Source: Malacoraja senta
Lineage: Eukaryota
Length of the DNA: 64,000 nt
Reading direction: 5' to 3'
Assembly (NCBI GenBank): GCA_038087875.1
Contig: JAXLNO010002777.1
Coordinates: 124,001 to 188,000 of the forward strand
Of this stretch, positions 14,502-54,030 are shown one piece after another. The notes beneath the pieces were generated by a model. The model saw only the letters and a list, made by a program, of their open reading frames with translations. It made no database searches and had not been told where the DNA came from. Made by a program: the position numbers and the translations under genes. Within the stretch, counting starts at the first letter, position 1, and each line of letters opens with the position of its first letter.

Positions 14502-15500
14502 GTCATGAGATATTGAAGCATTCTGGTTGCGTTATTGGACTAGCAAACCAGAGGTTTTCACTAGTATAGCAGAGATAGGAATTCAAATTCCATCACTCCT
14601 TTTAGGGAATTTAAATGTAATTCATTAATCTGGTCTAAAAAAAGTGAATGGCATTTCCCAGTGACCGTTAAACAACTTGACATTATAAACACCCATGTAA
14701 TTCACTAGTGAATAGACAGACCTGTGGCCTTGACCCCTATTGACTCTAGATTTGTCCAAATATCCTTTGAAATGGCTGGTTCAAGGGCATTTTTAAGGAT
14801 GAATATTAAATGATGGTCTGATCACAATGACACGTCCATGAAGGAAAAGTAATATTCGGACAATAGCTCAACTCTCCAACTGGCTGAGTATCTTATTGAG
14901 CCCATTTTCTCAGTATTCTGCACACAATAGCTTTCCTTCAAAAGAGGTTGATGCTTTTTCAATTTTCCCTTCCCAATATCCTTCTCACAATATTAACACT
15001 CAGTACAGCTTAGTAATGGTGCCTGGGATCCTTGAGATTTCTAACCAGACAAGATGAGTTTCTATGGTGAGACGATTCTGGTTAACTATTTTATCTGTCA
15101 ATGAGTTCAGTTACCTTGCTAATGATTGGTGACGAATTATGTTAGTGAAGCAGTGGTTTCCATTGTAATATTTTCCTCAAATCTAAATTATAAGCATGGG
15201 GTATTATTGGTGATTTACAATATCTTTATAAATAAAATCATTTAGTGCTGAGGCACTGAGATAAATAAACGATAAGGTCTCACGTTCAATTATTGCTCTG
15301 TCCTCAGTTTGCAAATTCCTGAAAGCCTTCCCTGAAAGTGGATGATATTTTTGTTGAAAACAAGATTGATGTTTTTCAAACCTGTTTTCTCTCCATTCAC
15401 ACATATTCACTGGTTAATTATTGTCATTCGGACTCTGCCTGGGATGAGATGGTAATTTTGAAAGATTTGAGGTGAAAGATTTTAAAAAAGGTAAAACATA

Positions 15501-17085
15501 CAGTGGCTTGCAAAAGTTTTCATACCCCTTGAACTTTTCCACATTTTGTCACGTTACAACCACAAACGTAAATGTATTTTATTGGGATTTTATGTGATAG
15601 ACCAACACAAAGTGGTGCATAATTGTGAAGTGGAAGGAAAATGATACATGGTTTTCAAATTTTTTTACAAATAAAAAACTGAAAAGTGTCGCGTGCAAAA
15701 GTATTCAGCCCCCCTGAGTCAATACTTTGTAGAACCACCTTTCGCTGCAATTACAGCTGCAAGTCTTTTGGGGTATGTCTCTACCAGCTTTGCACATCTA
15801 GAGACTGAAATTTTTGCCCATTCTTCTTTGCAAAATAGCTCAAGCTCAGTCAGATTGGATGGAGAGCGTCTGTGAACAGCACTTTTCAAGTCTTGCCAGA
15901 GATTCTCAATTGGATTTAGGTCTGGACTTTGACTGGGCCATTCTCACATGAATATGCTTTGATCTAAACCATTCCATTGTAGCTCTGGCTGTATGTTTAG
16001 GGTCGTTGTCCTGCTGGAAAGTGAACCTCCGCCCCAGTCTCAAGTCTTTTGCAGACTCTAACAGGTTTTCATCCAAGATTGCCCTGTATTTGGCTCCATC
16101 CATCTTCCCATCAAGTCTGACCAGCTTCCCTGTCCCTGCTGAAGAAAAGCATCCCCACAGCATGATGCTGCCACCACCATGTTTCACAGTGGGGATGGTG
16201 TGTTCAGGGTGATGTGCAGTGTTAGGTTTCCGCCACACATAGCATTTTGCATTTCGGCTAAAAACTTCAATTTTGGTCTCATCTGACCAGAGCACCTTCC
16301 TCCACATGTTTGCTGTGTCCCCCACATGGCTTGTGGCAAACAGCAAACGGGACTTCTTATGGCTTTTTTTCAACAATGGCTTTCTTCTTGCCACTCTTCC
16401 ATAAAGGCCCGATTTGTGGAGTGCACGACTAATAGTGGTCCTGTGGACAGATTCTCCCACCTGAGCTGTGGATCTCTGCAGCTCCTCCAGAGTTACCATG
16501 GGCCTCTTGGCTGCTTCTCTGATCAATGCTCTCCTTGCCCGGCCTGTCAGTTTAGGTGGACGGCCATGTCTTGGTAGGTTTGCAGTTGTGCCATACTCTT
16601 TCCATTTTCGGATGATGGATTGAACAGTGCTCCGTGAGATGTTCAAAGCTTGGGATATTTGTTTATAACCTAACCCTGCTTTAAACTTCTCCACAACTTT
16701 ATCCCTGACCTGTCTGGTGTGTTCCTTGGGCTTCATGATGCTGTTTGTTCACTAATGTTCTCTAACAAACCTCTGAGGCCTTCACAGAACAGCTGTATTT
16801 ATACTGAGATTAGATTACACACAAGTGGACTCTATTTACTAATTAGGTGACTTCTGAAGGCAATTGGTTGCACTAGATTTTATTTAGGGGTATCAGAGTA
16901 AACGGAGCTGAATACTTTTGCACGCGACACTTTTCAGTTTTTTATTTGTAAAAAAATTTGAAAACCATGTATCATTTTCCTTCCACTTCACAATTATGCG
17001 CCACTTTGTGTTGGTCTATCACATAAAATCCCAATAAAATACATTTACGTTTGTGGTTGTAATGTGACAAAATGTGGAAAAGTTC
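15501..17085 (-). mobile_element. Tc1/mariner DD34E transposon, Passport-like IR/DR type; right TIR truncated
   Basis: Left end TA|CAGTGGCTTGCAAAAG. ~210-bp TIRs (15501-~15709 vs ~16907-17085) are near-identical, with inner and outer direct repeats. The last ~30 bp of the right TIR are missing. Confidence 0.95.
15719..16736 (-). pseudogene. Tc1 transposase with a single 2-bp frameshift near 15945
   Basis: 276-aa ORF (HTH, GRPPK, WSDETK, QDNDPKH) continues in another frame as [20 protein letters not shown]...KGGSTKY* (stop 15721-15719). Restoring 2 nt gives 339 aa with D-34-E spacing. Confidence 0.92.
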
Positions 17086-17089
17086 TAAA

Positions 17090-17143
17090 CCCTAACCCTA
17101 ACCCTAACCCTAACCCTAACCCTAACCCTAACCCTAACCCTAA
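17090..17143 (-). repeat. Interstitial telomeric repeat (TTAGGG)9
   Basis: Nine perfect CCCTAA units on the + strand, four nt from the truncated Tc1 TIR. Confidence 0.97.
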
Positions 17144-17808
17144 TGCTTCATGGAGGAAAAGTAAAAATACTTAACATTCTCAAAGAAAACACTTAAACCA
17201 GGCATTGTATCTATGTAGAAGGCAGGAAAGGGGTACTTATTGGGGATGATCCGCCCCAATAAGTTGAAGAATTGGTTGCAAGGTACTTATTGGTTGCGAT
17301 CAGCCCCTATGTAGAGGGCAGGAAAGGGGTACTTATTGGGGATGATCACATTGAATAATGCTGGCTCGAAGGGCCGAATGGCCTCCTCCTGCGCCTATTG
17401 TCTATTGTCTATTTTTAAATAATGCATGAGAGAGATAGAAGCTATAATAAATACTGTATGTAAAAAAATAATAATGAATGGTGTGCCATGGAGCTGCCAG
17501 AAACCCACATGGGCATGCAATCCCACATAGATCAGGCCATAGCAAAGACAAATGTCCTTCTACGAGAATTAATAAACCAGATTTTTGTTTGACAGTCAAG
17601 CAATGTTATGAATTCACTGTTACTGTTGCAGAACTAGCTTTTTATTTGACATCTTTTTAATTCATGTAAATTCCGCAGCTCGTGTCTGTGGATCTTAAGT
17701 GTGGGCCTCTGGATTGCAAGTAACCCAACCTATGCTACCATGTCCCTAATTCAAGTTTTATGATAATAATCAGGTGTGGTACCTTATTTTGTCTTCTGTT
17801 TTTATCAG

Positions 17809-17970
17809 TGACAGACATCAGTGTTCTGAGCATGGCATCAAAGGTGGTTGGCACTCAGGTTGTGGGTTATATTGCCACTTCATCAGGAATAAGACGGCTT
17901 CTATTGGAGGGTTTCCATTCCACTGATGTTTCCAAGAAATCAGTTGCAATGGAACACTACAGATCTTTAG
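17809..17970 (+). CDS. FBXO47: FBXO47 coding exon 2
   Basis: VTDISVLSMASKVVG...RRLLLEGFH...MEHYRSL; AG/GT boundaries, phases 1/1. Confidence 0.92.
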
Positions 17971-19614
17971 GTAATTTTCTAAAGGAGAGTAAGACATACA
18001 AAGTGGAGCCTAAGGCCATGATTTAAAGCTTACAAATTAATATTCATGCAGATTCCAATTCGCCTGTCCATGAAAATCAATTTGCTAGGGTACTGATCCA
18101 TGGGTATTAGCCACCCACTGGCCTTTTGTTCCATTGGCATACTTTATGAAGCAGAAATGTATTTCATAATAAAATATTTGAAGGTTAAATGTTTTTGTGC
18201 AGATGGTTATTGAAGCTGGTTTTAGTTATAATGTTACAGGAACATGACAAAGAATAATATGAAAGGGTTGGGAGAAAAGCTGCATAATGGCATGACGGTG
18301 CATTGCTGATATTAACCATGACATAGGCACAGTTGGCAGAAGTTGTTTCCTCCTGTGCTTAAATAGTTGTCATTCTGTGACATGCATGCATGTGGTTGAA
18401 AGGGCAGGAGTTTTGATAATAGTTGGGGGAGTGAATAGGCAACAGTGCAGAGTTCACCTTATCTCTCTCAACAAATAGACATGTACACAATTAGTCGGAC
18501 ACATAGAGCTCACTGAGCAGAATTCTGAGCAGCTTCCCCACTTCCTTGGTTTTAAATATTACTGATAGAAAAAGAATAACGCATCTGGAAAACTCAGAAA
18601 GGCCATTAAATGCAATTAAAGAGCAGGAACTTGTCTCTTATGCTAAGGAGTGTCAAACAATTGAGCAACATTTATAGCAGACATTAAGGCTTTTTGGCCA
18701 GTTAGGCTAACTGCTGTTAATGCATAACTAGAGATTGTCCCAATTTTTTATTTTATCTCATCCTGACAACAGTTCCTGCCATACCTTTACTTTCCTAATA
18801 CCACCTGGTTCTCCTGAAATGTATTTTTGCTATTCGGCTTAATGTGGCCGCGAATTTAATAATCTTATCACATGCATGATTTGGAAATGGATGTAGGAGG
18901 TATGATTAGTAAGTTGGTTGATGAGACAGAGATTGGTGGGGTTGTTGATGGTGTGGAGAGTAGATACATAGATACATAGAAAATAGGTGCAGGAGTAGGC
19001 CATTCGGCCCTTCGAGCCTGCACCGCCATTCAATATGATCATGGCTGATCATCCAACTCAGTATCCCGTACCTGCCTTCTCTCCATACCCCCTGATCCCC
19101 TTAGCCACAAGGGCCACATCTAACTCCCTCTTAAATATAGCCAATGAACTGGCCTCAACTACCCTCTGTGGCAGGCTTCAGAATGTTATGAGAGTAATGG
19201 TGAATGGCCTGAGAAATGGCAGATGGAGTTTAAATTGGAGTGGTGCATTTGGGAGTACTAATGAGGCTAGGATATACACCATGACAGATAAGGTTGGGGT
19301 GTATTTGGTACCAGAGGGACTTTGTGTGCAAGGTCAAACATCTTTAAAGTTCCAGCACTGGTAGATAACTTGGTTAGGTAGGCATATGGGTTACTGGCTT
19401 TCATTATTTGGGGCACCGAGTATAGGAACAGGAAGGTTATGCTCCATCTTTATGATACATTGGTCAGACCTCAGCTGTAGCACTACACGCAGTTCTGGTC
19501 ATGACACCATAGGAAGAATTGGGCCAGATCTAGCAATATCCATTTTGCCATCATTGACCTTATCTATCTGCAGCACCATGTTACATAAACTAACATTTGG
19601 TTTTGTTTACTCAG

Positions 19615-33634: not shown

Positions 33635-34232
33635 CAGGGAGGTTCTACTGCAGTTGTACAGGGTCTTGGTGAGACCACACCTGGAGTATTGCGTACAGTT
33701 TTGGTCTCCTAATCTGAGGAAAGACATTCTTGCCATAGAGGGAGTACAGAGAAGGTTCACCAGACTGATTCCTGGGATGGCAGGACTTTCATATGAGGAA
33801 AGACTGGATAGACTCGGCTTGTTGGAATTCAGAAGACTGAGGGGGGATCTTATAGAAACTTACAAAATTCTTAAGGGGTTGGACAGGCTAGATGCAGGAA
33901 GATTATTCCCGATGTTGGGGAAGTCCAGAACTAGGGGTCACAGTTTAAGGATAAGAGGGAAGACTTTTAGGACTGAGATGAGGAAATCATTTTTTACACA
34001 GAGAGTGGTGAATCTGTGGAATTCTCTGCCACAGAAGGTAGTTGAGGCCAGTTCATTGGCTATATTTAAGAGGGAGTTAGATGTGGCCCTTGTGGCTAAA
34101 GGGATCAGGGGGTATGGAGAGAAGGCAGGGATGGGATACTGAGTTGGATGATCAGCCATGATCATATCAAATGGCGGTGCAGGCTCGAAGGGCCGAATGG
34201 CCTACTCCTGCACCTATTTTCTATATTTCTAT
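33635..34232 (+). mobile_element. CR1 LINE 3' fragment nested in an older CR1 fragment
   Basis: ORF 33654-34142 (LVRPHLEYCVQFWSP...RGDLIETYKI...FFTQRVVNLWNSLP) is a CR1 ORF2 C-terminus; flanked by atgagag duplication. The host CR1 continues at 33550-33634 and 34233-34550. Confidence 0.9.
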
Positions 34233-35914
34233 GAGAGGAATTGACAGTTAATTCACAGTCTTTTATCCAGGGTAGGGCAATCAAGAATCAGAGGACATAG
34301 TTTTAAGGCGAAAGGAAAAATTTAATAGGAGCCTGAGGGACAACTTTTTCACTCAAAAGGTCATAAATAGGAGGAGGTAATTAAGGCAGGTACTATAACA
34401 GCATTTAAAAGACACTTGGATAAGTACATGGATAGGAACAGTTTAGAGGGATGTGGGCCAAATTCAGGCAAATGGGACTAGCTTAGATGGGGCATCTTGG
34501 TCGGCATGGAGGAACTGGGCTGAAGGGCCTGTTTCCATGCTATATGACTGTCGAAGTACTTGATTGACTGAGATGAGAGTCTTATTAGTCCATGCCAATT
34601 GGCATCTAATGTTATCTAAAGGACCCCAGTGGTATTCCTATGACGTGGCTGGGAAGGTCTTCTGAAGTGAGTCAAGAATTTTCTTTGCCAAGTGTTGCCA
34701 GGAGGAATATTGTCAATGTGCAGAATTCCAATTCCTGCGTATTCCTATGCCATTCAGCACTATTCTCGAAGGAAACAATGTTTTCAGGAGCACAAGCATT
34801 CAGAACTGTAGCAGTGTTGGTTACTTGGTTTGATCCTAAATTTAGAATGAAACATATGATGGGTCATGAAGATGCAGATTAAAATGGGGTACAGGTGCAG
34901 GTGGTGATCAACAGTGCCACATATATTTGAGCTGCCACATCTATCTGCAATCTTTTCATTTACTATAACAATAATGCTACATGACGGGATGTGGAATATC
35001 CTTGGTGTGAAGACAGGTCTTTGTCTCTCCAAGGACTGATGGTGGTCATTCCTAACAATAGAGTCATGGACAGATGCTTCTGCAGCAGACAGATAGATGA
35101 AGGAGTGGTGAGATAGGCTCATCCCTTTTAGTTTAGTTTAGTTTACGTTCTCCCCGTGACCGCGTGGGTTTTCTCAGAGATCTTCGGTTTCCTCCCACAC
35201 TCCAAAGAGGTACAGGTTTGTAGGTTAATTGGCTTGGGTTTGTATACTTGGTATAAGTGTAAATTGTCCCTAGTGTGTGTAGGCTTGTGTTAATGTGCAG
35301 GGATCGCTAGTCGTTGCGGACACGGTGGGCCGAAGGGCTTGTATCCGCGCTATATCTCTAAACTAAACTAAACTTTGTAACAGTTGTTTTCAATGACAGG
35401 CTGGTGAGACTACTTGAGCAGGAAAAGTTATTTGCAAGCCAGGGTTGAAAGAGGTGACAGACTGCAGTTGCAAAAGATATTGGAAAACTAACTGAATTTA
35501 AAGCAATTCAGCAACTTTTACAATGGATTTTCTGGCCTTTAGTTGCCATTGTTCTTGTTGGTTTTGTTGATTTGTTTTGTTGAAGTAGTAACTTCTCATG
35601 ATGTTTACAGACAATGTGTAGTGGTTGGATTAATGTGTATCAACATGGGGGTATGATCATTAAAATAAATACAGGATAATGACTGGATATCACCCTTTGT
35701 TAATCCTGCTATCTGATGAATTAATAGTATCAGGAAATTCTCCTGTTTAAATCAGTGAAGATTCTTAACTAAGTTGACCTTAAATTTAATAATAATTATG
35801 TGTACTACTCTAATTTTTGTTCTTTGATAGATTTCTGATACTGAAAATCATTTTTCAATCGTTTTAAGCCTATATTGTGGACTAAGCTGTTAATAACTGC
35901 TGTCTGTCCTACAG

Positions 35915-45690: not shown

Positions 45691-48689
45691 CATGATGTTA
45701 CTTGGAAATATGTAGAAGCTGGAATATCAACTGCCTTTATCAAGTGCAAGATATTACCCAGTTGAACATCCAGTATAACTAGTTTTTACCTGAAAGATTT
45801 ACTGTTTCTCTTCCCATTGACCTAATAAGTATTTGGTGACACAAGGAACTGCAGAAGTTGGAATCTTGAACACAACACAAAGTGCTGGAGCAACTCAGCG
45901 AATCAGGCAACATCTGTGGATGCAATAGACATGAAACGTTTCAGAAGGGTCCCGACCCAAACCGTTGTCTGAACATTTCCTCCACAGGTGTTGCCTGAGC
46001 CGTTGTGTCCCTCCTGCACTCTGTGTCTTGCTGCTGGGTATTAACTGCTTTAGTCTTTATTGTGGTCATAATCGTATTGCAATTAACAGGAACTTGGCAA
46101 ATTGGCGGCAGGGTTCCTATAATTTCCTCAGTGACTGGATCTCAAAAGTCCTACCTTGGCTGAAAAATCTTTGGCAGATCCTGAAAGATGAGCTCTTGAA
46201 AGATGCTTCAGAAATTGAGAGATGCAAGTATTCTATGAAAAGCAAGTGAGGTTTTATTGTTTAATTAGCTTTGAAATACAATAATGTGTAGGTCCTGAAA
46301 AAAGTTCCAACCCTCTACTGTTTCAGTATACATTGTAGATTGCACAACAATTTTCATTTGGAGGCATTGGAGACAATTTACCTTTTGGGAAACCAAAATA
46401 AAGTTCTTTCACTAAATACAATAAATTTGCAGCTGCAAAGCATGAAATCCAACTGGAATCGTTGTCATCGCTATAAAGATTGTGTGGTCCTTTGTCACAT
46501 TGTGCTTGAGTTGATTAAAATAATCTGTGCCTTCTGGACTCAGCCTGCAGTTACGTTGTTTTAATTTTTGATCTTTCTTGGCTGCACACAGCCGAAAACC
46601 CTTCAGCTGGCATGCATGGACGCGTGTCGCTGCCTGTGGCGTAAAGCAGGCATGGAGATGTGTGACAGAGAGGGAGAGATGAAGAGAAAATGGGGAGATT
46701 GTCAGAAAGAATCTAGTGTCTGTTGTCTGAAATGAAGCTGTATGTGTCAACCGTATATAAATTATACAGCTAGTCGTCTGAAAATGTACCTGGCCTACTA
46801 AAGGGCAATGGCCTTCATTATTTAATCTGTTTTCTCTTTCTACTTTATTTTCTCTTTCGCTTCCTTCCTTGATCTTCCACTCCTTGTTTTTCTGTTCCTT
46901 TCTTTCCAAGCTCCACGTTCTTTCTTCATTTTTCTTCCCGAGTAACACATGTTCTGCACTGCCATTTAAGAGTGATGGTTAGGAGATGAGTGCGTGCGAG
47001 TTTGTTCTTGAAACAAAGGACATTTTGAGAAGATTTAATTGAAGTACATTTCGTTTTATGATTCCCGCAAGACAGTATAGATGGGAAAGATATACTTCCC
47101 TCAGAAAATAGGTCAACATTTAGGATAGTAGATTGAAGGTAGTTGGTAAAAGGATTTAAGATAGAGTTAGATAGAGCTCTAGGGGCTAGTGGAATCAAGG
47201 GATATGGGGAGAAGGCAGGCACGGGTTATTGATTGGGGACGATCAGCCATGATCACAATGAATGGCGGTGCTGGCTCGAAGGGCCGAATGGCCTCCTCCT
47301 GCACGTATTTTCTATGTTTCTATGTTTCTATGATAGTTTAGTTTAGTGATACAGCGCAGAACAGGCCTTTCGGCCCTCCGCACCAACCTGTGATCCCCAT
47401 ACATTAACACTATTCTACACACACACTAGGAACTATTTTACATTCATACCAAGCCAATTAACCTACAAACCTGGACATCTTTGGAGTGTGGGAGGAGAAA
47501 CCCATGCAGGTCACGGGGAGAACGTACAAACTCCGTATAGACAGCACCTGTGGTCTGGATCGAACCCGGGTCTCTGGCGCTGTTAGGCAGTCGCTCTACT
47601 GCTCCACCACCGTGCTGCCAGAATTGGAGGGACTTGAAGAAAACAAATTTTCATCCAAAGGGTGAGGGTGAAGAGCTCTTGCCTGAATGGATAGTGGAGG
47701 CAGACGTTCACACCGTGTTTCAGGTGTGCCTGGACATTCCCAGACCTACCTGGGTTTGTATAGAGAGCTGGCAGTTGAGGTTAGCTTCAATAGTTACTTC
47801 TTGGCTAGCATGGACACTGTGGGGTGAATGAATTGTGTCTGTACCATGAATATCTGTATCATGGAGACATAGAGTCCTACAGCACGGCAACAGACCCTTT
47901 GGCCCAACTCGTCCATTGCCAACCAAGATGCCCCATCTAAGCCAATCCCATTTAACCCACATCCCTCTAAACCTTTCCTATCCATGTACCTGTCCAAGTG
48001 TCTTTTAAATGTTGTTATAGTGTCAGCCTCAACTACCTTCTCTGGCAGCTCGTTCCATATACCTACCACTCTGAGTGAAAATGTTGACCCTCGGGTTCCT
48101 ATCTTTCCCCTCTCACCGTAAACCTATATCCTCTGATTCTTGATTAACCTACCCTTGGTAGAGTCCTTTACCAAGATGCCCCAATCTAAGGTGTCCCATT
48201 TCCTTATGTTTGTGCATTCACCCTGTCTATTCCCCTCCTAATAGAACACAAAGTACTGGAGCAACTCGGCAGGCCAGGCAGCGTTTCTGGAGAACATGGA
48301 TAGGTGATGTTTAGGGTCGGGTGGTGAATCTGTGGAATTATTTTTCATAGACGGCTGTGGAAGCCAAGTCAATGGATATATTTAAGGCGGAGACAGATAG
48401 ATTCTTGATTAGTACGGGTGTGGGGAGAAGGCAGGAGAATAGGTTAGGAGGGAGAGATAGATCAGCCATGATTGAATGGCGGAGTAGACTTCACAAGTTA
48501 TAAGAGTAGAATTAGGCCATTCGGCCCATCGAGTCCACCACCATTCAATCATGGCTGATTTCTGCCTCCTGTCCCATTTTCCTGCCTTCTCTCCATAACC
48601 CTTGATGGTCGAATTGGCCTAATTAGTGATAGATTAGTCTCCCATCATTAATGAGACCCCTTTTTCCAGAGATGCTGCCTGACCTGCTG

Positions 48690-52737: not shown

Positions 52738-53085
52738 AGCTAGATGCGGGAAATATGTTCCCAATGTTGGGCGAGTCCAGAACCAGGGGCCACAGTCTTA
52801 GAATAAAGGGGAGGTCATTTAAGACTGAGGTGAGAAAAAACATTTTCGCCCAGAGAGTTGTGAATTTGTGGAATTCCCTGCCACAGAGGGCAGTGGAGGC
52901 CAAGTCACTGGATGGGTTTAAGAGAGAGTTAGATAGAGCTCTAGGGGCTAGTGGAGTCAAGGAATATGGAGAGAAGGCAGGCACGGGTTATTGATAGGGG
53001 ACGATCAGCCATGATCACAATGAATGGCGGTGCTGGCTCGAAGGGCCGAATGGCCTCCTCCTGCACCTATTTTCTATGTTTCTAT
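52738..53085 (+). mobile_element. CR1 LINE 3' fragment
   Basis: LDAGNMFPMLGESRTRGHSLRIKG...QRVVNLWNSLP plus ctatgttt tail. Similar stubs at 18961-19172(-), 47153-47332(+), 20530-20940(+) and 54495-54848(+). Confidence 0.85.
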
Positions 53086-54030
53086 GAAGGGCCTGTTACT
53101 GTCCTGCACTGTTCCATGTTCCATGATGTTAAGTTCAGAAGGCGACAATGCACCAAGTCAGAAGACGAACAGCAGTTCCTTGAAATTTTACTGAACATTA
53201 TTGGAACCGCCCGGGAGGCCAGAGTGGTGAGAACATCCGCAGGCTCAGGGTCACTCTGTGGACTGAAGGGATGTTCTCTGCAAAGCAGCAACCTGTGTCT
53301 GCGTTTGGTTTCCCAATGTTGATGGCACCACGGCGCCAGCATCCAAGTCTAAAACGGAGCACGGCAAAGTTGATTGCTGCTTCGCTGATGTGGGATGAAG
53401 GCAGTAGATTCTCCAACCATCATCCTGGTAACCAGAACCCAACTATCACTAGTAAAAATACATTATCCGATCATTTATACAATATAGAACATGGAACACA
53501 ACAGGTTTGTAGGTCGTTTGGCTTGGTATGAATGTAAAATTGTCCCCAGTGTACAACAGCGCAACACAAGAATGGACCCTACAGCCATCAATGTTTGTGT
53601 CGAACATGATGCCAAGTTTAGCTGATCTCATCTGCCTGTATCTGATCCATATCCCTCTATTCCCCGCACTTCCATGTGACTATTTAAAAGTCTCTTAGAT
53701 GCCACTATTGTATCTGCCACCACCACCACCCCTGGCAAACGTTCTATGCACCCACCACCCTCTGTGTCAACCACTGGTTCATACCCTTTAAACTTTCCCC
53801 CTCGCATCTTAAATCTGTGCCCTCTAGTTTTGGACCCCGAGGAAAAAGATTCTGACTGTCTACCCTCTCATAATATTACATACTTCTATCAGTCTCCCCT
53901 CAACCTCTGACTGTACCTAGGACACGTGACAATAACTAAACCATTTTATTGACCATTGACGTCCCAGAGAATCTCCAACGTTCCAGAGAGTTTATGTTAG
54001 TATTTGTAGTAAACAGAAGCTTAAACATTG

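What the first reader, a model, noticed from the sequence alone, without database searches (positions are those of the whole stretch)
15499..17150. Tc1 transposon end replaced by a telomere tract: candidate fossil of telomerase healing at a transposase cut
Seen: the right TIR matches the left up to aagttc (17085). The terminal ~30 bp, including the outer transposase-binding repeat and CACTG end, are missing and replaced by taaa + (CCCTAA)9, followed by unique flank. The last unit ends ...cccTAatgcttca, so the TA expected as the Tc1 target duplication sits at 17141-42, in register with the repeat. On the minus strand the flank reads ...gaagcatTA->GGGTTAGGG..., a 3' TTA end pointing into the element. 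Known: Tc1 transposases cut at the TIR/TA boundary, and short vertebrate interstitial telomeres are attributed to telomerase acting at breaks with in-frame microhomology. Inference: single-end cleavage, telomerase extension of the flank, then end-joining to the resected element, which immobilised it.
Basis: partly seen in the sequence, partly recalled or inferred. Interest (0 to 1): 0.85.

Follow-up and report, generated by a model that had tools for sequence, protein, structure and literature searches.

The report
Telomere repeats at a deletion scar
A Tc1 transposon copy lost the tip of one end, together with at least 225 bases of neighbouring DNA, and nine perfect telomere repeats fill the gap; this is an ordinary short interstitial telomere left by break repair, with nothing tying the break to the transposase.

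Summary
A Tc1-like element (TA 15499-15500, body 15501-17085) has a complete left inverted repeat. Its right repeat lacks the outer 30 bp plus the TA. In their place are taaa and (CCCTAA)9 (17086-17143), the only telomeric tract in the window.

Four related organisms each have one single-copy contig over the left flank (96-97% identical) that passes the insertion point without the Tc1. None continues with the predicted 'TAatgcttcatgg'.
- Two of them read ...aaaaca(T/G)A followed by GATTAAAGCGG..., at least 225 bp that are absent from the window.
- The other two jump from 15488 to window 17472.

So the telomere tract lies at a deletion junction. The deletion removed the Tc1 tip and at least 225 bp of flank inside a collinear locus. 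The 'TA in register' is simply part of the last repeat unit.

This fits the commonest published class of short interstitial telomeric sequences: insertion during double-strand-break repair, with deletion and a few filler bases. The G-strand orientation fits telomerase extending the right-hand broken end.

A transposase origin of the break is not excluded, but nothing now specifically supports it. The junction itself could not be checked on reads because the tool masks it. I class this as a new member of a known kind, of low to moderate interest.

The parts
15489..15500 (+). Left remnant of a lineage-specific segment X (aggtaaaaca + TA). The TA at 15499-15500 is the Tc1 target site.
   Evidence: Organisms A and C share these bases and then continue with other sequence. 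Organisms J and B leave the alignment at 15488.
15501..15712 (+). Complete left inverted repeat of the Tc1-like element. It has an outer repeat at about 15501-15530 and a similar inner repeat near 15690-15716.
   Evidence: I1, I3. Other copies' contigs end at 15498/15499 with heterogeneous flanks (table 7, X17).
15719..16736 (-). Tc1 (DD34E-type) transposase gene, in two frames because of one frame shift near 15944.
   Evidence: A 2-letter length difference at 15944 is seen in a minority of other copies (table 4).
16904..17085 (+). Right inverted repeat, truncated. The inner part is kept. The outer 30 bp and the TA are missing.
17086..17089 (+). Four filler bases (taaa), neither Tc1 sequence nor an in-phase telomere unit.
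17090..17143 (-). Short interstitial telomeric sequence: nine perfect units, (TTAGGG)9 on the minus strand, with the G-strand 3' end pointing into the Tc1.
17144..17468 (+). Right remnant of segment X. It has a low-copy part (17144-17210), a very abundant SINE-like repeat (about 17298-17413), AATAAA at 17446 and an A-run at 17462-17468.
   Evidence: The segment is absent from organisms J and B.
17472..17496 (+). Start of the downstream flank that directly follows position 15488 in organisms J and B. It shows the locus is collinear.
   Evidence: 24/24 and 24/25 identities, E = 4e-9 and 3e-7 against the whole window.

Best explanation
This is a short interstitial telomeric sequence laid down when a germline double-strand break was repaired. 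The repair also deleted DNA on both sides of the break.

Order of events:
1. A segment X was already present at this locus (shared with organisms A and C).
2. In the lineage of the sequenced species, a complete Tc1-like element inserted at a TA 12 bp into X.
3. Later a break occurred at or near the element's right end. The outer 30 bp of the right inverted repeat, the duplicated TA and at least 225 bp of X were lost.
4. The 3' end of the right-hand broken end was extended with TTAGGG repeats, most likely by telomerase.
5. That extended end was joined to the chewed-back Tc1 end by end-joining, with four filler bases.

The copy was left without its outer transposase-binding repeat and cleavage site, so it cannot be excised from that end.

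Shown here: the anatomy, the absence of the Tc1 at the orthologous site in four relatives, the mismatch between the relatives' flank and the present flank, and the collinearity of the locus.

Inferred: that the deletion and the tract arose in one event, that telomerase made the tract, and that the copy is immobile.
For: - Anatomy.
- Tc1 is absent at the orthologous site. In each of four related organisms, exactly one contig at single-copy depth lies on 15150-15500 at 96-97% identity and runs on past the insertion point without Tc1.
- A continues after the TA with 225 nt that lie nowhere on 15300-17500. The first 30 of them are absent from the whole window. C shows the same sequence.
- At 17197 the only A contig has a different depth (76.5 versus 35.1), so the left-flank contig does not reach the present right flank (table 3).
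- J and B join 15488 to 17472. Both sides of the Tc1/telomere block therefore belong to one locus.
- The tract is perfect, single-orientation and short. There is no TERC-like fragment.
- Published short ITSs arise at break sites. About 50% come with a flanking deletion, some also have random additions, and several lie inside repeats and were judged against the repeat consensus (PMC2246262). The same is reported across vertebrates including sharks (PMC8537989).
- A cut-and-paste element must have had both ends intact to insert, so the right end was complete at insertion (established Tc1/mariner mechanism).
Against: - The right breakpoint could not be compared with the ancestral sequence. It is therefore unknown whether relatives already carry telomeric repeats just left of 'tgcttcatgg', and whether there is in-register microhomology.
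- The deletion is inferred from 225 nt of one relative and 30 visible letters of another. An independent insertion at exactly this TA in the A/C lineage is unlikely but not excluded.
- No read or contig available here spans 17085-17143. The tool masks the region, and same-species contigs do not cover 17150-17229.
- Telomerase is inferred from orientation and by analogy. Capture of a telomeric DNA fragment would look the same.
Confidence: 0.62

Rival explanations
1. Tc1 transposase cut only the right end of the element. Telomerase extended the flank end, and the product was joined to the resected element.
For: The break lies within about 32 bp of a transposase cleavage site. The family is very abundant and young: this copy differs by about 0.6% from the majority letter, and there are thousands of near-identical contigs. 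The G-strand orientation fits extension of the flank end.
Against: Its one specific prediction fails. The relatives' sequence next to the TA is not the present right flank, so the flank-side junction is not at the TIR/TA boundary and the 'TA in register' is only part of a repeat unit. More DNA was lost on the flank side (at least 225 bp) than on the element side (32 bp). Published surveys found no link between such insertions and transposons (PMC8537989). Only this one of 32 Tc1 notes in the scan of this genome mentions telomeric repeats.
Confidence: 0.1
2. The telomeric tract already existed inside segment X, for example as part of a repeat that carries telomeric units. A plain deletion then joined the Tc1 repeat to it.
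For: An unchecked first-stage note reports a MITE carrying telomeric repeats elsewhere in this genome. Interstitial telomeric tracts are known fragile sites (general knowledge). The ancestral sequence left of 17144 was not seen.
Against: A breakpoint falling exactly at the edge of a rare 54-bp tract is improbable a priori. All nine units are perfect, although the locus differs by about 3% from its relatives. No other copy of 17144-17210 or of the tract exists in the window.
Confidence: 0.13
3. Assembly artefact: a chimeric or collapsed join at a telomere-like read.
For: No independent read or contig spanning 17085-17143 could be examined. Same-species Logan contigs do not cover 17150-17229.
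Against: Both sides belong to one locus in the relatives: the left flank, and 17472 onward directly adjoining it in J and B. The assembly gaps are more than 33 kb away. The same-species contig matches 15300-15521 exactly, and others match 17230-17347 and 17387-17500 exactly.
Confidence: 0.05
4. A telomeric DNA or cDNA fragment was captured at the break, without telomerase acting on the broken end.
For: The end product is indistinguishable from telomerase extension. The four filler bases show untemplated or patchwork joining.
Against: Published loci show in-register microhomology far above expectation, which points to telomerase (PMC2246262). That could not be tested here.
Confidence: 0.1

Closest known systems
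Short interstitial telomeric sequences (s-ITS) inserted during double-strand-break repair (Nergadze et al.; PMC2246262)
   Same: A short, exact, single-orientation TTAGGG array at an internal site. It is accompanied by deletion of flanking DNA and a few added bases. It interrupts a repeat whose intact form is known. The orientation is compatible with telomerase priming on one broken end.
   Different: It is found in a cartilaginous fish rather than a mammal. It truncates the terminal inverted repeat of a young Tc1 copy. Absence of the tract in relatives and in-register microhomology could not be verified.
TERC-ITS loci, where telomeric repeats are flanked by retrotranscribed telomerase RNA (PMC8537989; includes two shark loci)
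   Same: Telomerase-linked repair insertions with deletion and random addition at the site. Some interrupt transposable elements.
   Different: No TERC-like fragment flanks this tract. An Rfam scan at E<=1 of 15000-18000 found none.
Telomere-bearing elements (TBE) of Oxytricha, Tc1/mariner-related transposons with telomeric repeats at their inverted-repeat tips (recalled from memory, not checked here)
   Same: Telomeric repeats abut the inverted repeat of a Tc1/mariner-type element.
   Different: In TBEs the repeats are a family feature at both intact ends. Here it is one copy and one end, the end is truncated, and the left end plus other copies' left ends carry no telomeric repeats.
De novo telomere addition at breaks during programmed genome rearrangement in ciliates, where domesticated piggyBac-type transposases make the DNA-elimination cuts (reviewed in PMC7599177, seen in search only)
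   Different: The ciliate process makes new chromosome ends in somatic nuclei. Here the tract is internal, germline and fixed, and a transposase cut is not shown.

Membership tests
Short interstitial telomeric sequence (s-ITS) inserted at a break | Few to few hundred bp of exact or near-exact TTAGGG hexamers in one orientation (not head-to-head) | tested here: met
   Nine perfect units on one strand only.
Short interstitial telomeric sequence (s-ITS) inserted at a break | Internal site within a locus that is collinear with relatives | tested here: met
   The left flank and 17472 onward are adjacent in organisms J and B. The left flank is single-copy in all four relatives.
Short interstitial telomeric sequence (s-ITS) inserted at a break | End-joining-type changes at the site (deletion, random addition) | tested here: met
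   32 bp of Tc1 end and at least 225 bp of flank are missing, and there are 4 filler bases.
Short interstitial telomeric sequence (s-ITS) inserted at a break | Tract absent from the orthologous locus of related species (sudden appearance) | tested here: inconclusive
   The relatives lack the Tc1 and show no telomeric repeats in the 30 letters visible after the insertion point. The ancestral sequence at the right breakpoint was not seen, because read laying masks 17080-17151.
Short interstitial telomeric sequence (s-ITS) inserted at a break | [quoted passage not shown] | not testable with these tools
   This needs the ancestral sequence at the right breakpoint. Both read-laying runs were used.
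Tc1/mariner, Tc1-like DD34E element with long IR/DR-type inverted repeats | Transposase with paired-like HTH domains and a D,D,E catalytic core | tested here: met
   Pfam HTH_Tnp_Tc3_2 at 8.6e-25 and HTH_SB at 5e-18. The DE..., DNDPKH and NPIE motifs are read in two frames.
Tc1/mariner, Tc1-like DD34E element with long IR/DR-type inverted repeats | TA target site and CAGTG-type termini on long inverted repeats | tested here: met
   The left end is TA|CAGTGG. The arms are 182 nt at 98%. Relatives diverge exactly after the TA. The right terminus is missing in this copy.
   A reads ...aaaacaTA + GATTAAAGCGG.... C reads ...aaaacaGA + GATTAAAGCGG.... J and B skip from 15488 to 17472.
   Only 64 kb of the genome is readable. 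The scan's notes list three telomeric-repeat findings and 32 Tc1 findings in this genome, with only this one in both. These notes are not a census.

The most novel reading that the evidence does not exclude
The break was made by the Tc1 transposase itself (abortive, one-ended cleavage of the right end). After resection on both sides it was repaired with telomerase. This would be a germline fossil linking cut-and-paste transposase activity to telomerase-mediated repair in a vertebrate. The reading would gain weight only if short telomeric tracts prove enriched and consistently oriented at Tc1 termini across this Tc1-rich genome.
Probability: 0.1. Interest if true: 0.6.

Novelty: new member of a known kind. 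Interest (0 to 1): 0.25.

Why it matters
As it stands this is one more short interstitial telomere at a repair scar. Its modest value has three parts.
- The event can be ordered in time. It follows a species-specific Tc1 insertion that four relatives lack.
- It lies in a cartilaginous fish, where few such loci have been described. PMC8537989 lists two TERC-ITS loci in a catshark.
- The intact form of one side is known exactly from the element's own left end, so the loss on that side (32 bp) can be read to the base.

It would matter more only if a genome-wide survey showed that telomeric tracts cluster at Tc1 ends. This single locus gives no support for that.

Tried and rejected
- Another element inserted into the inverted repeat. 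The missing 32-nt end is nowhere else in the window with up to 3 mismatches, so the tip is not simply displaced to the far side of an insertion.
- Family feature. The left end of this copy, and the flanks of other copies' left ends, carry no telomeric repeats. The right ends of other copies could not be seen because the tool masks 17080-17151.
- TERC-ITS. No telomerase-RNA-like hit at E<=1. The only hits were weak NRON matches on the Tc1 repeats, far below threshold.
- Chromosome fusion or terminal healing. The tract has a single orientation, and both flanks belong to one locus in the relatives.
- Fetching other copies from public collections. An exact 22-mer of the inverted repeat found nothing in metagenome contigs. 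The other collections are microbial or viral and were not scanned.
- Searching the scan's notes by sequence for 17080-17310 gave nothing.
- A weak local similarity between the A/C continuation and 17193-17211 (15 of 18 bases with two gaps) was judged chance.
- Literature search for Tc1 together with interstitial telomeric sequences gave only cytogenetic fusion-type cases.

Full report
**1. The observation**

- A Tc1-like element starts with TA|CAGTGG at 15499-15506.
- Its inverted-repeat arms, 15531-15712 and 16904-17085, are 182 nt long and 98% complementary (the three mismatches are listed).
- The left repeat continues outward for another 30 bp to the CAGTG terminus. The right one stops at ...aagttc (17085).
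- The 32 nt expected next (30 bp of repeat plus TA) occur in the window only at the left end, even with three mismatches allowed.
- In their place are taaa (17086-17089) and nine perfect CCCTAA units (17090-17143).
- This is the only telomeric run in the 64 kb on either strand, against about zero expected.

The element is a genuine Tc1.
- The minus-strand ORF matches HTH_Tnp_Tc3_2 (8.6e-25) and the Sleeping Beauty HTH domain (5e-18).
- It carries the D, D and E motifs, read in two frames because of one frame shift near 15944.
- An inner copy of the terminal repeat (pair I3) gives the IR/DR layout.

One correction. The tract is nine whole units ending at 17143. The 'TA' at 17141-42 is part of the last unit and carries no information of its own.

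**2. What related genomes show**

The index found one run of what is evidently the same species, X15. Its contigs are identical to the window over 15300-15521, 17230-17347 and 17387-17500. It also found many other coded organisms that hold the Tc1.

Laying contigs on 15300-17500 showed three things.
- The Tc1 family is present in tens of thousands of contigs per run.
- Other copies' left ends stop at 15498/15499 with unrelated flanks.
- This copy differs from the majority letter at about ten positions, or 0.6%.

In each of four other organisms (A, C, J, B) exactly one contig, at that run's single-copy depth, lies on the flank at 96-97% identity. Each runs on past the insertion point without Tc1. 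The Tc1 is therefore a lineage-specific insertion, and its left boundary at the TA is exact.

- A reads ...aaaacaTA and then GATTAAAGCGGCC..., for 225 nt.
- C reads ...aaaacaGA and then the same sequence.
- J and B leave the alignment at 15488 and continue with a sequence that is window 17472-17496 (24/24 and 24/25 identities, E = 4e-9 and 3e-7).

The A/C continuation is absent from the whole window. In one search, A's contig had no second piece anywhere on 15300-17500. At 17197 the only A contig has a different depth (76.5 against 35.1).

**3. Reconstruction**

- Positions 15489-17468 form a segment, here called X, that J and B lack. X is bounded by A-runs and ends with AATAAA, ten bases and A7. 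It looks like an old retroposed insertion, although a deletion in J/B between the A-runs is equally possible.
- A, C and the window's species share the start of X.
- In the window's lineage a complete Tc1 inserted at the TA 12 bp into X. A cut-and-paste element needs both ends to integrate, so the right end was whole at that time.
- Later the outer 30 bp of the right repeat, the duplicated TA and at least 225 bp of X were lost. The gap now holds taaa plus (CCCTAA)9.
- The remaining right part of X (17144-17468) and the downstream flank are in place. The event was therefore a local deletion with insertion, not a fusion, a translocation or an assembly misjoin. The assembly gaps are more than 33 kb away.

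**4. Mechanism**

On the minus strand the tract reads ...gaagca(TTAGGG)9TTTA-gaacttttcc.... The G-strand thus runs 5'->3' from the right flank into the element. That is the polarity expected if the 3' end of the right-hand broken end was extended by telomerase and then joined, with four filler bases, to the resected Tc1 end.

This is the published origin of short interstitial telomeric sequences.
- They appear suddenly at break sites.
- About half come with a deletion of flanking sequence, and some also with random additions.
- Several lie inside repeats and were interpreted from the repeat's consensus, exactly as here (PMC2246262).
- The same signatures are reported across vertebrates including sharks, with no enrichment for transposons around the sites (PMC8537989).
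- There is no TERC-like fragment at this locus.

Shown: the anatomy, the lineage-specific Tc1, the flank mismatch and the collinearity. Inferred: that the tract and the deletion arose together, that telomerase made the tract, and that the copy can no longer be excised.

**5.

The general idea, a telomere tract added at a break and joined to a resected element, stands. The specific claim does not. The flank next to the TA in relatives is not the present flank, so the flank-side junction is not the TIR/TA boundary, and the 'TSD in register' argument falls.

A transposase cut followed by resection of 32 bp on one side and at least 225 bp on the other remains possible. Nothing distinguishes it from any other break in or near X. 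In this scan's notes for the genome, only this one of 32 Tc1 notes involves telomeric repeats. Those notes are unchecked and are not a census.

**6. Limits**

- Read laying masks 17080-17151, so the junction could not be seen on reads or contigs.
- No same-species contig listed covers 17150-17229. The tool warns that holes prove nothing, and contigs containing human-like telomere repeats may be filtered.
- The ancestral sequence at the right breakpoint was not recovered. Two rivals therefore stay open: a pre-existing telomeric tract in X, and capture of a telomeric fragment rather than telomerase extension.
- An independent insertion in A/C at the very same TA would mimic the inferred deletion. 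I consider it unlikely.

**7. Verdict**

This is a real feature and an ordinary kind: a short interstitial telomere at a deletion scar that happens to truncate a young Tc1 copy. I class it as a new member of a known kind. Interest is 0.25.

Noticed in passing
window 15489-17468 (excluding the Tc1 and the tract): Segment X is present (at least its start) in the window's species and in organisms A and C, but absent from J and B, which join 15488 directly to about 17469-17472. It ends with AATAAA (17446), ten bases and A7, and is bounded by A-runs. That suits a retroposed insertion at a TTTT/AAAA site, or alternatively a deletion in J/B between the A-runs.
   Followed up: partly
window 17298-17445 (also 68-188, 1812-1976, 18967-19143, 34057-34233, 47154-47330, 52917-53086): A SINE-like repeat of about 110-177 nt containing ...ggccgaatggcctcctcctgc... 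is even more abundant than the Tc1 in all four organisms laid (summed contig depth 10^6-10^7). Its family boundaries are near 17359 and 17405-17413.
   Followed up: partly
window 15944 (Tc1 transposase, minus strand): This copy's reading frame shifts here. In contigs of other copies, only a minority (about 13% of depth in the same-species run) differ by two extra letters at this place. Most copies therefore seem to share the interrupted frame, suggesting that a defective lineage made up most of the amplification.
   Followed up: partly
window 15501-17085: Thirty-one-letter words of this Tc1's inverted repeat are held by runs of at least twelve differently coded organisms. Three other organisms besides the window's own carry thousands of contigs 95-100% alike. 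This points to a very young or very widely shared family. Other first-stage notes call it Passport-like and raise horizontal transfer.
   Followed up: no
window 17211-17251 and 17307-17347: A 41-nt direct repeat (97.6% identical) brackets an imperfect 26-nt inverted repeat (17239-17264 / 17285-17310) just upstream of the SINE-like core. This may be an internal duplication of the repeat's 5' part.
   Followed up: no
window 15506-15601 and 17015-17108: Weak Rfam matches to NRON (18.7 and 14.6 bits, threshold 50) fall on the two Tc1 inverted repeats. They most likely reflect Tc1-derived sequence in that family's seed and are not an RNA gene here.
   Followed up: no
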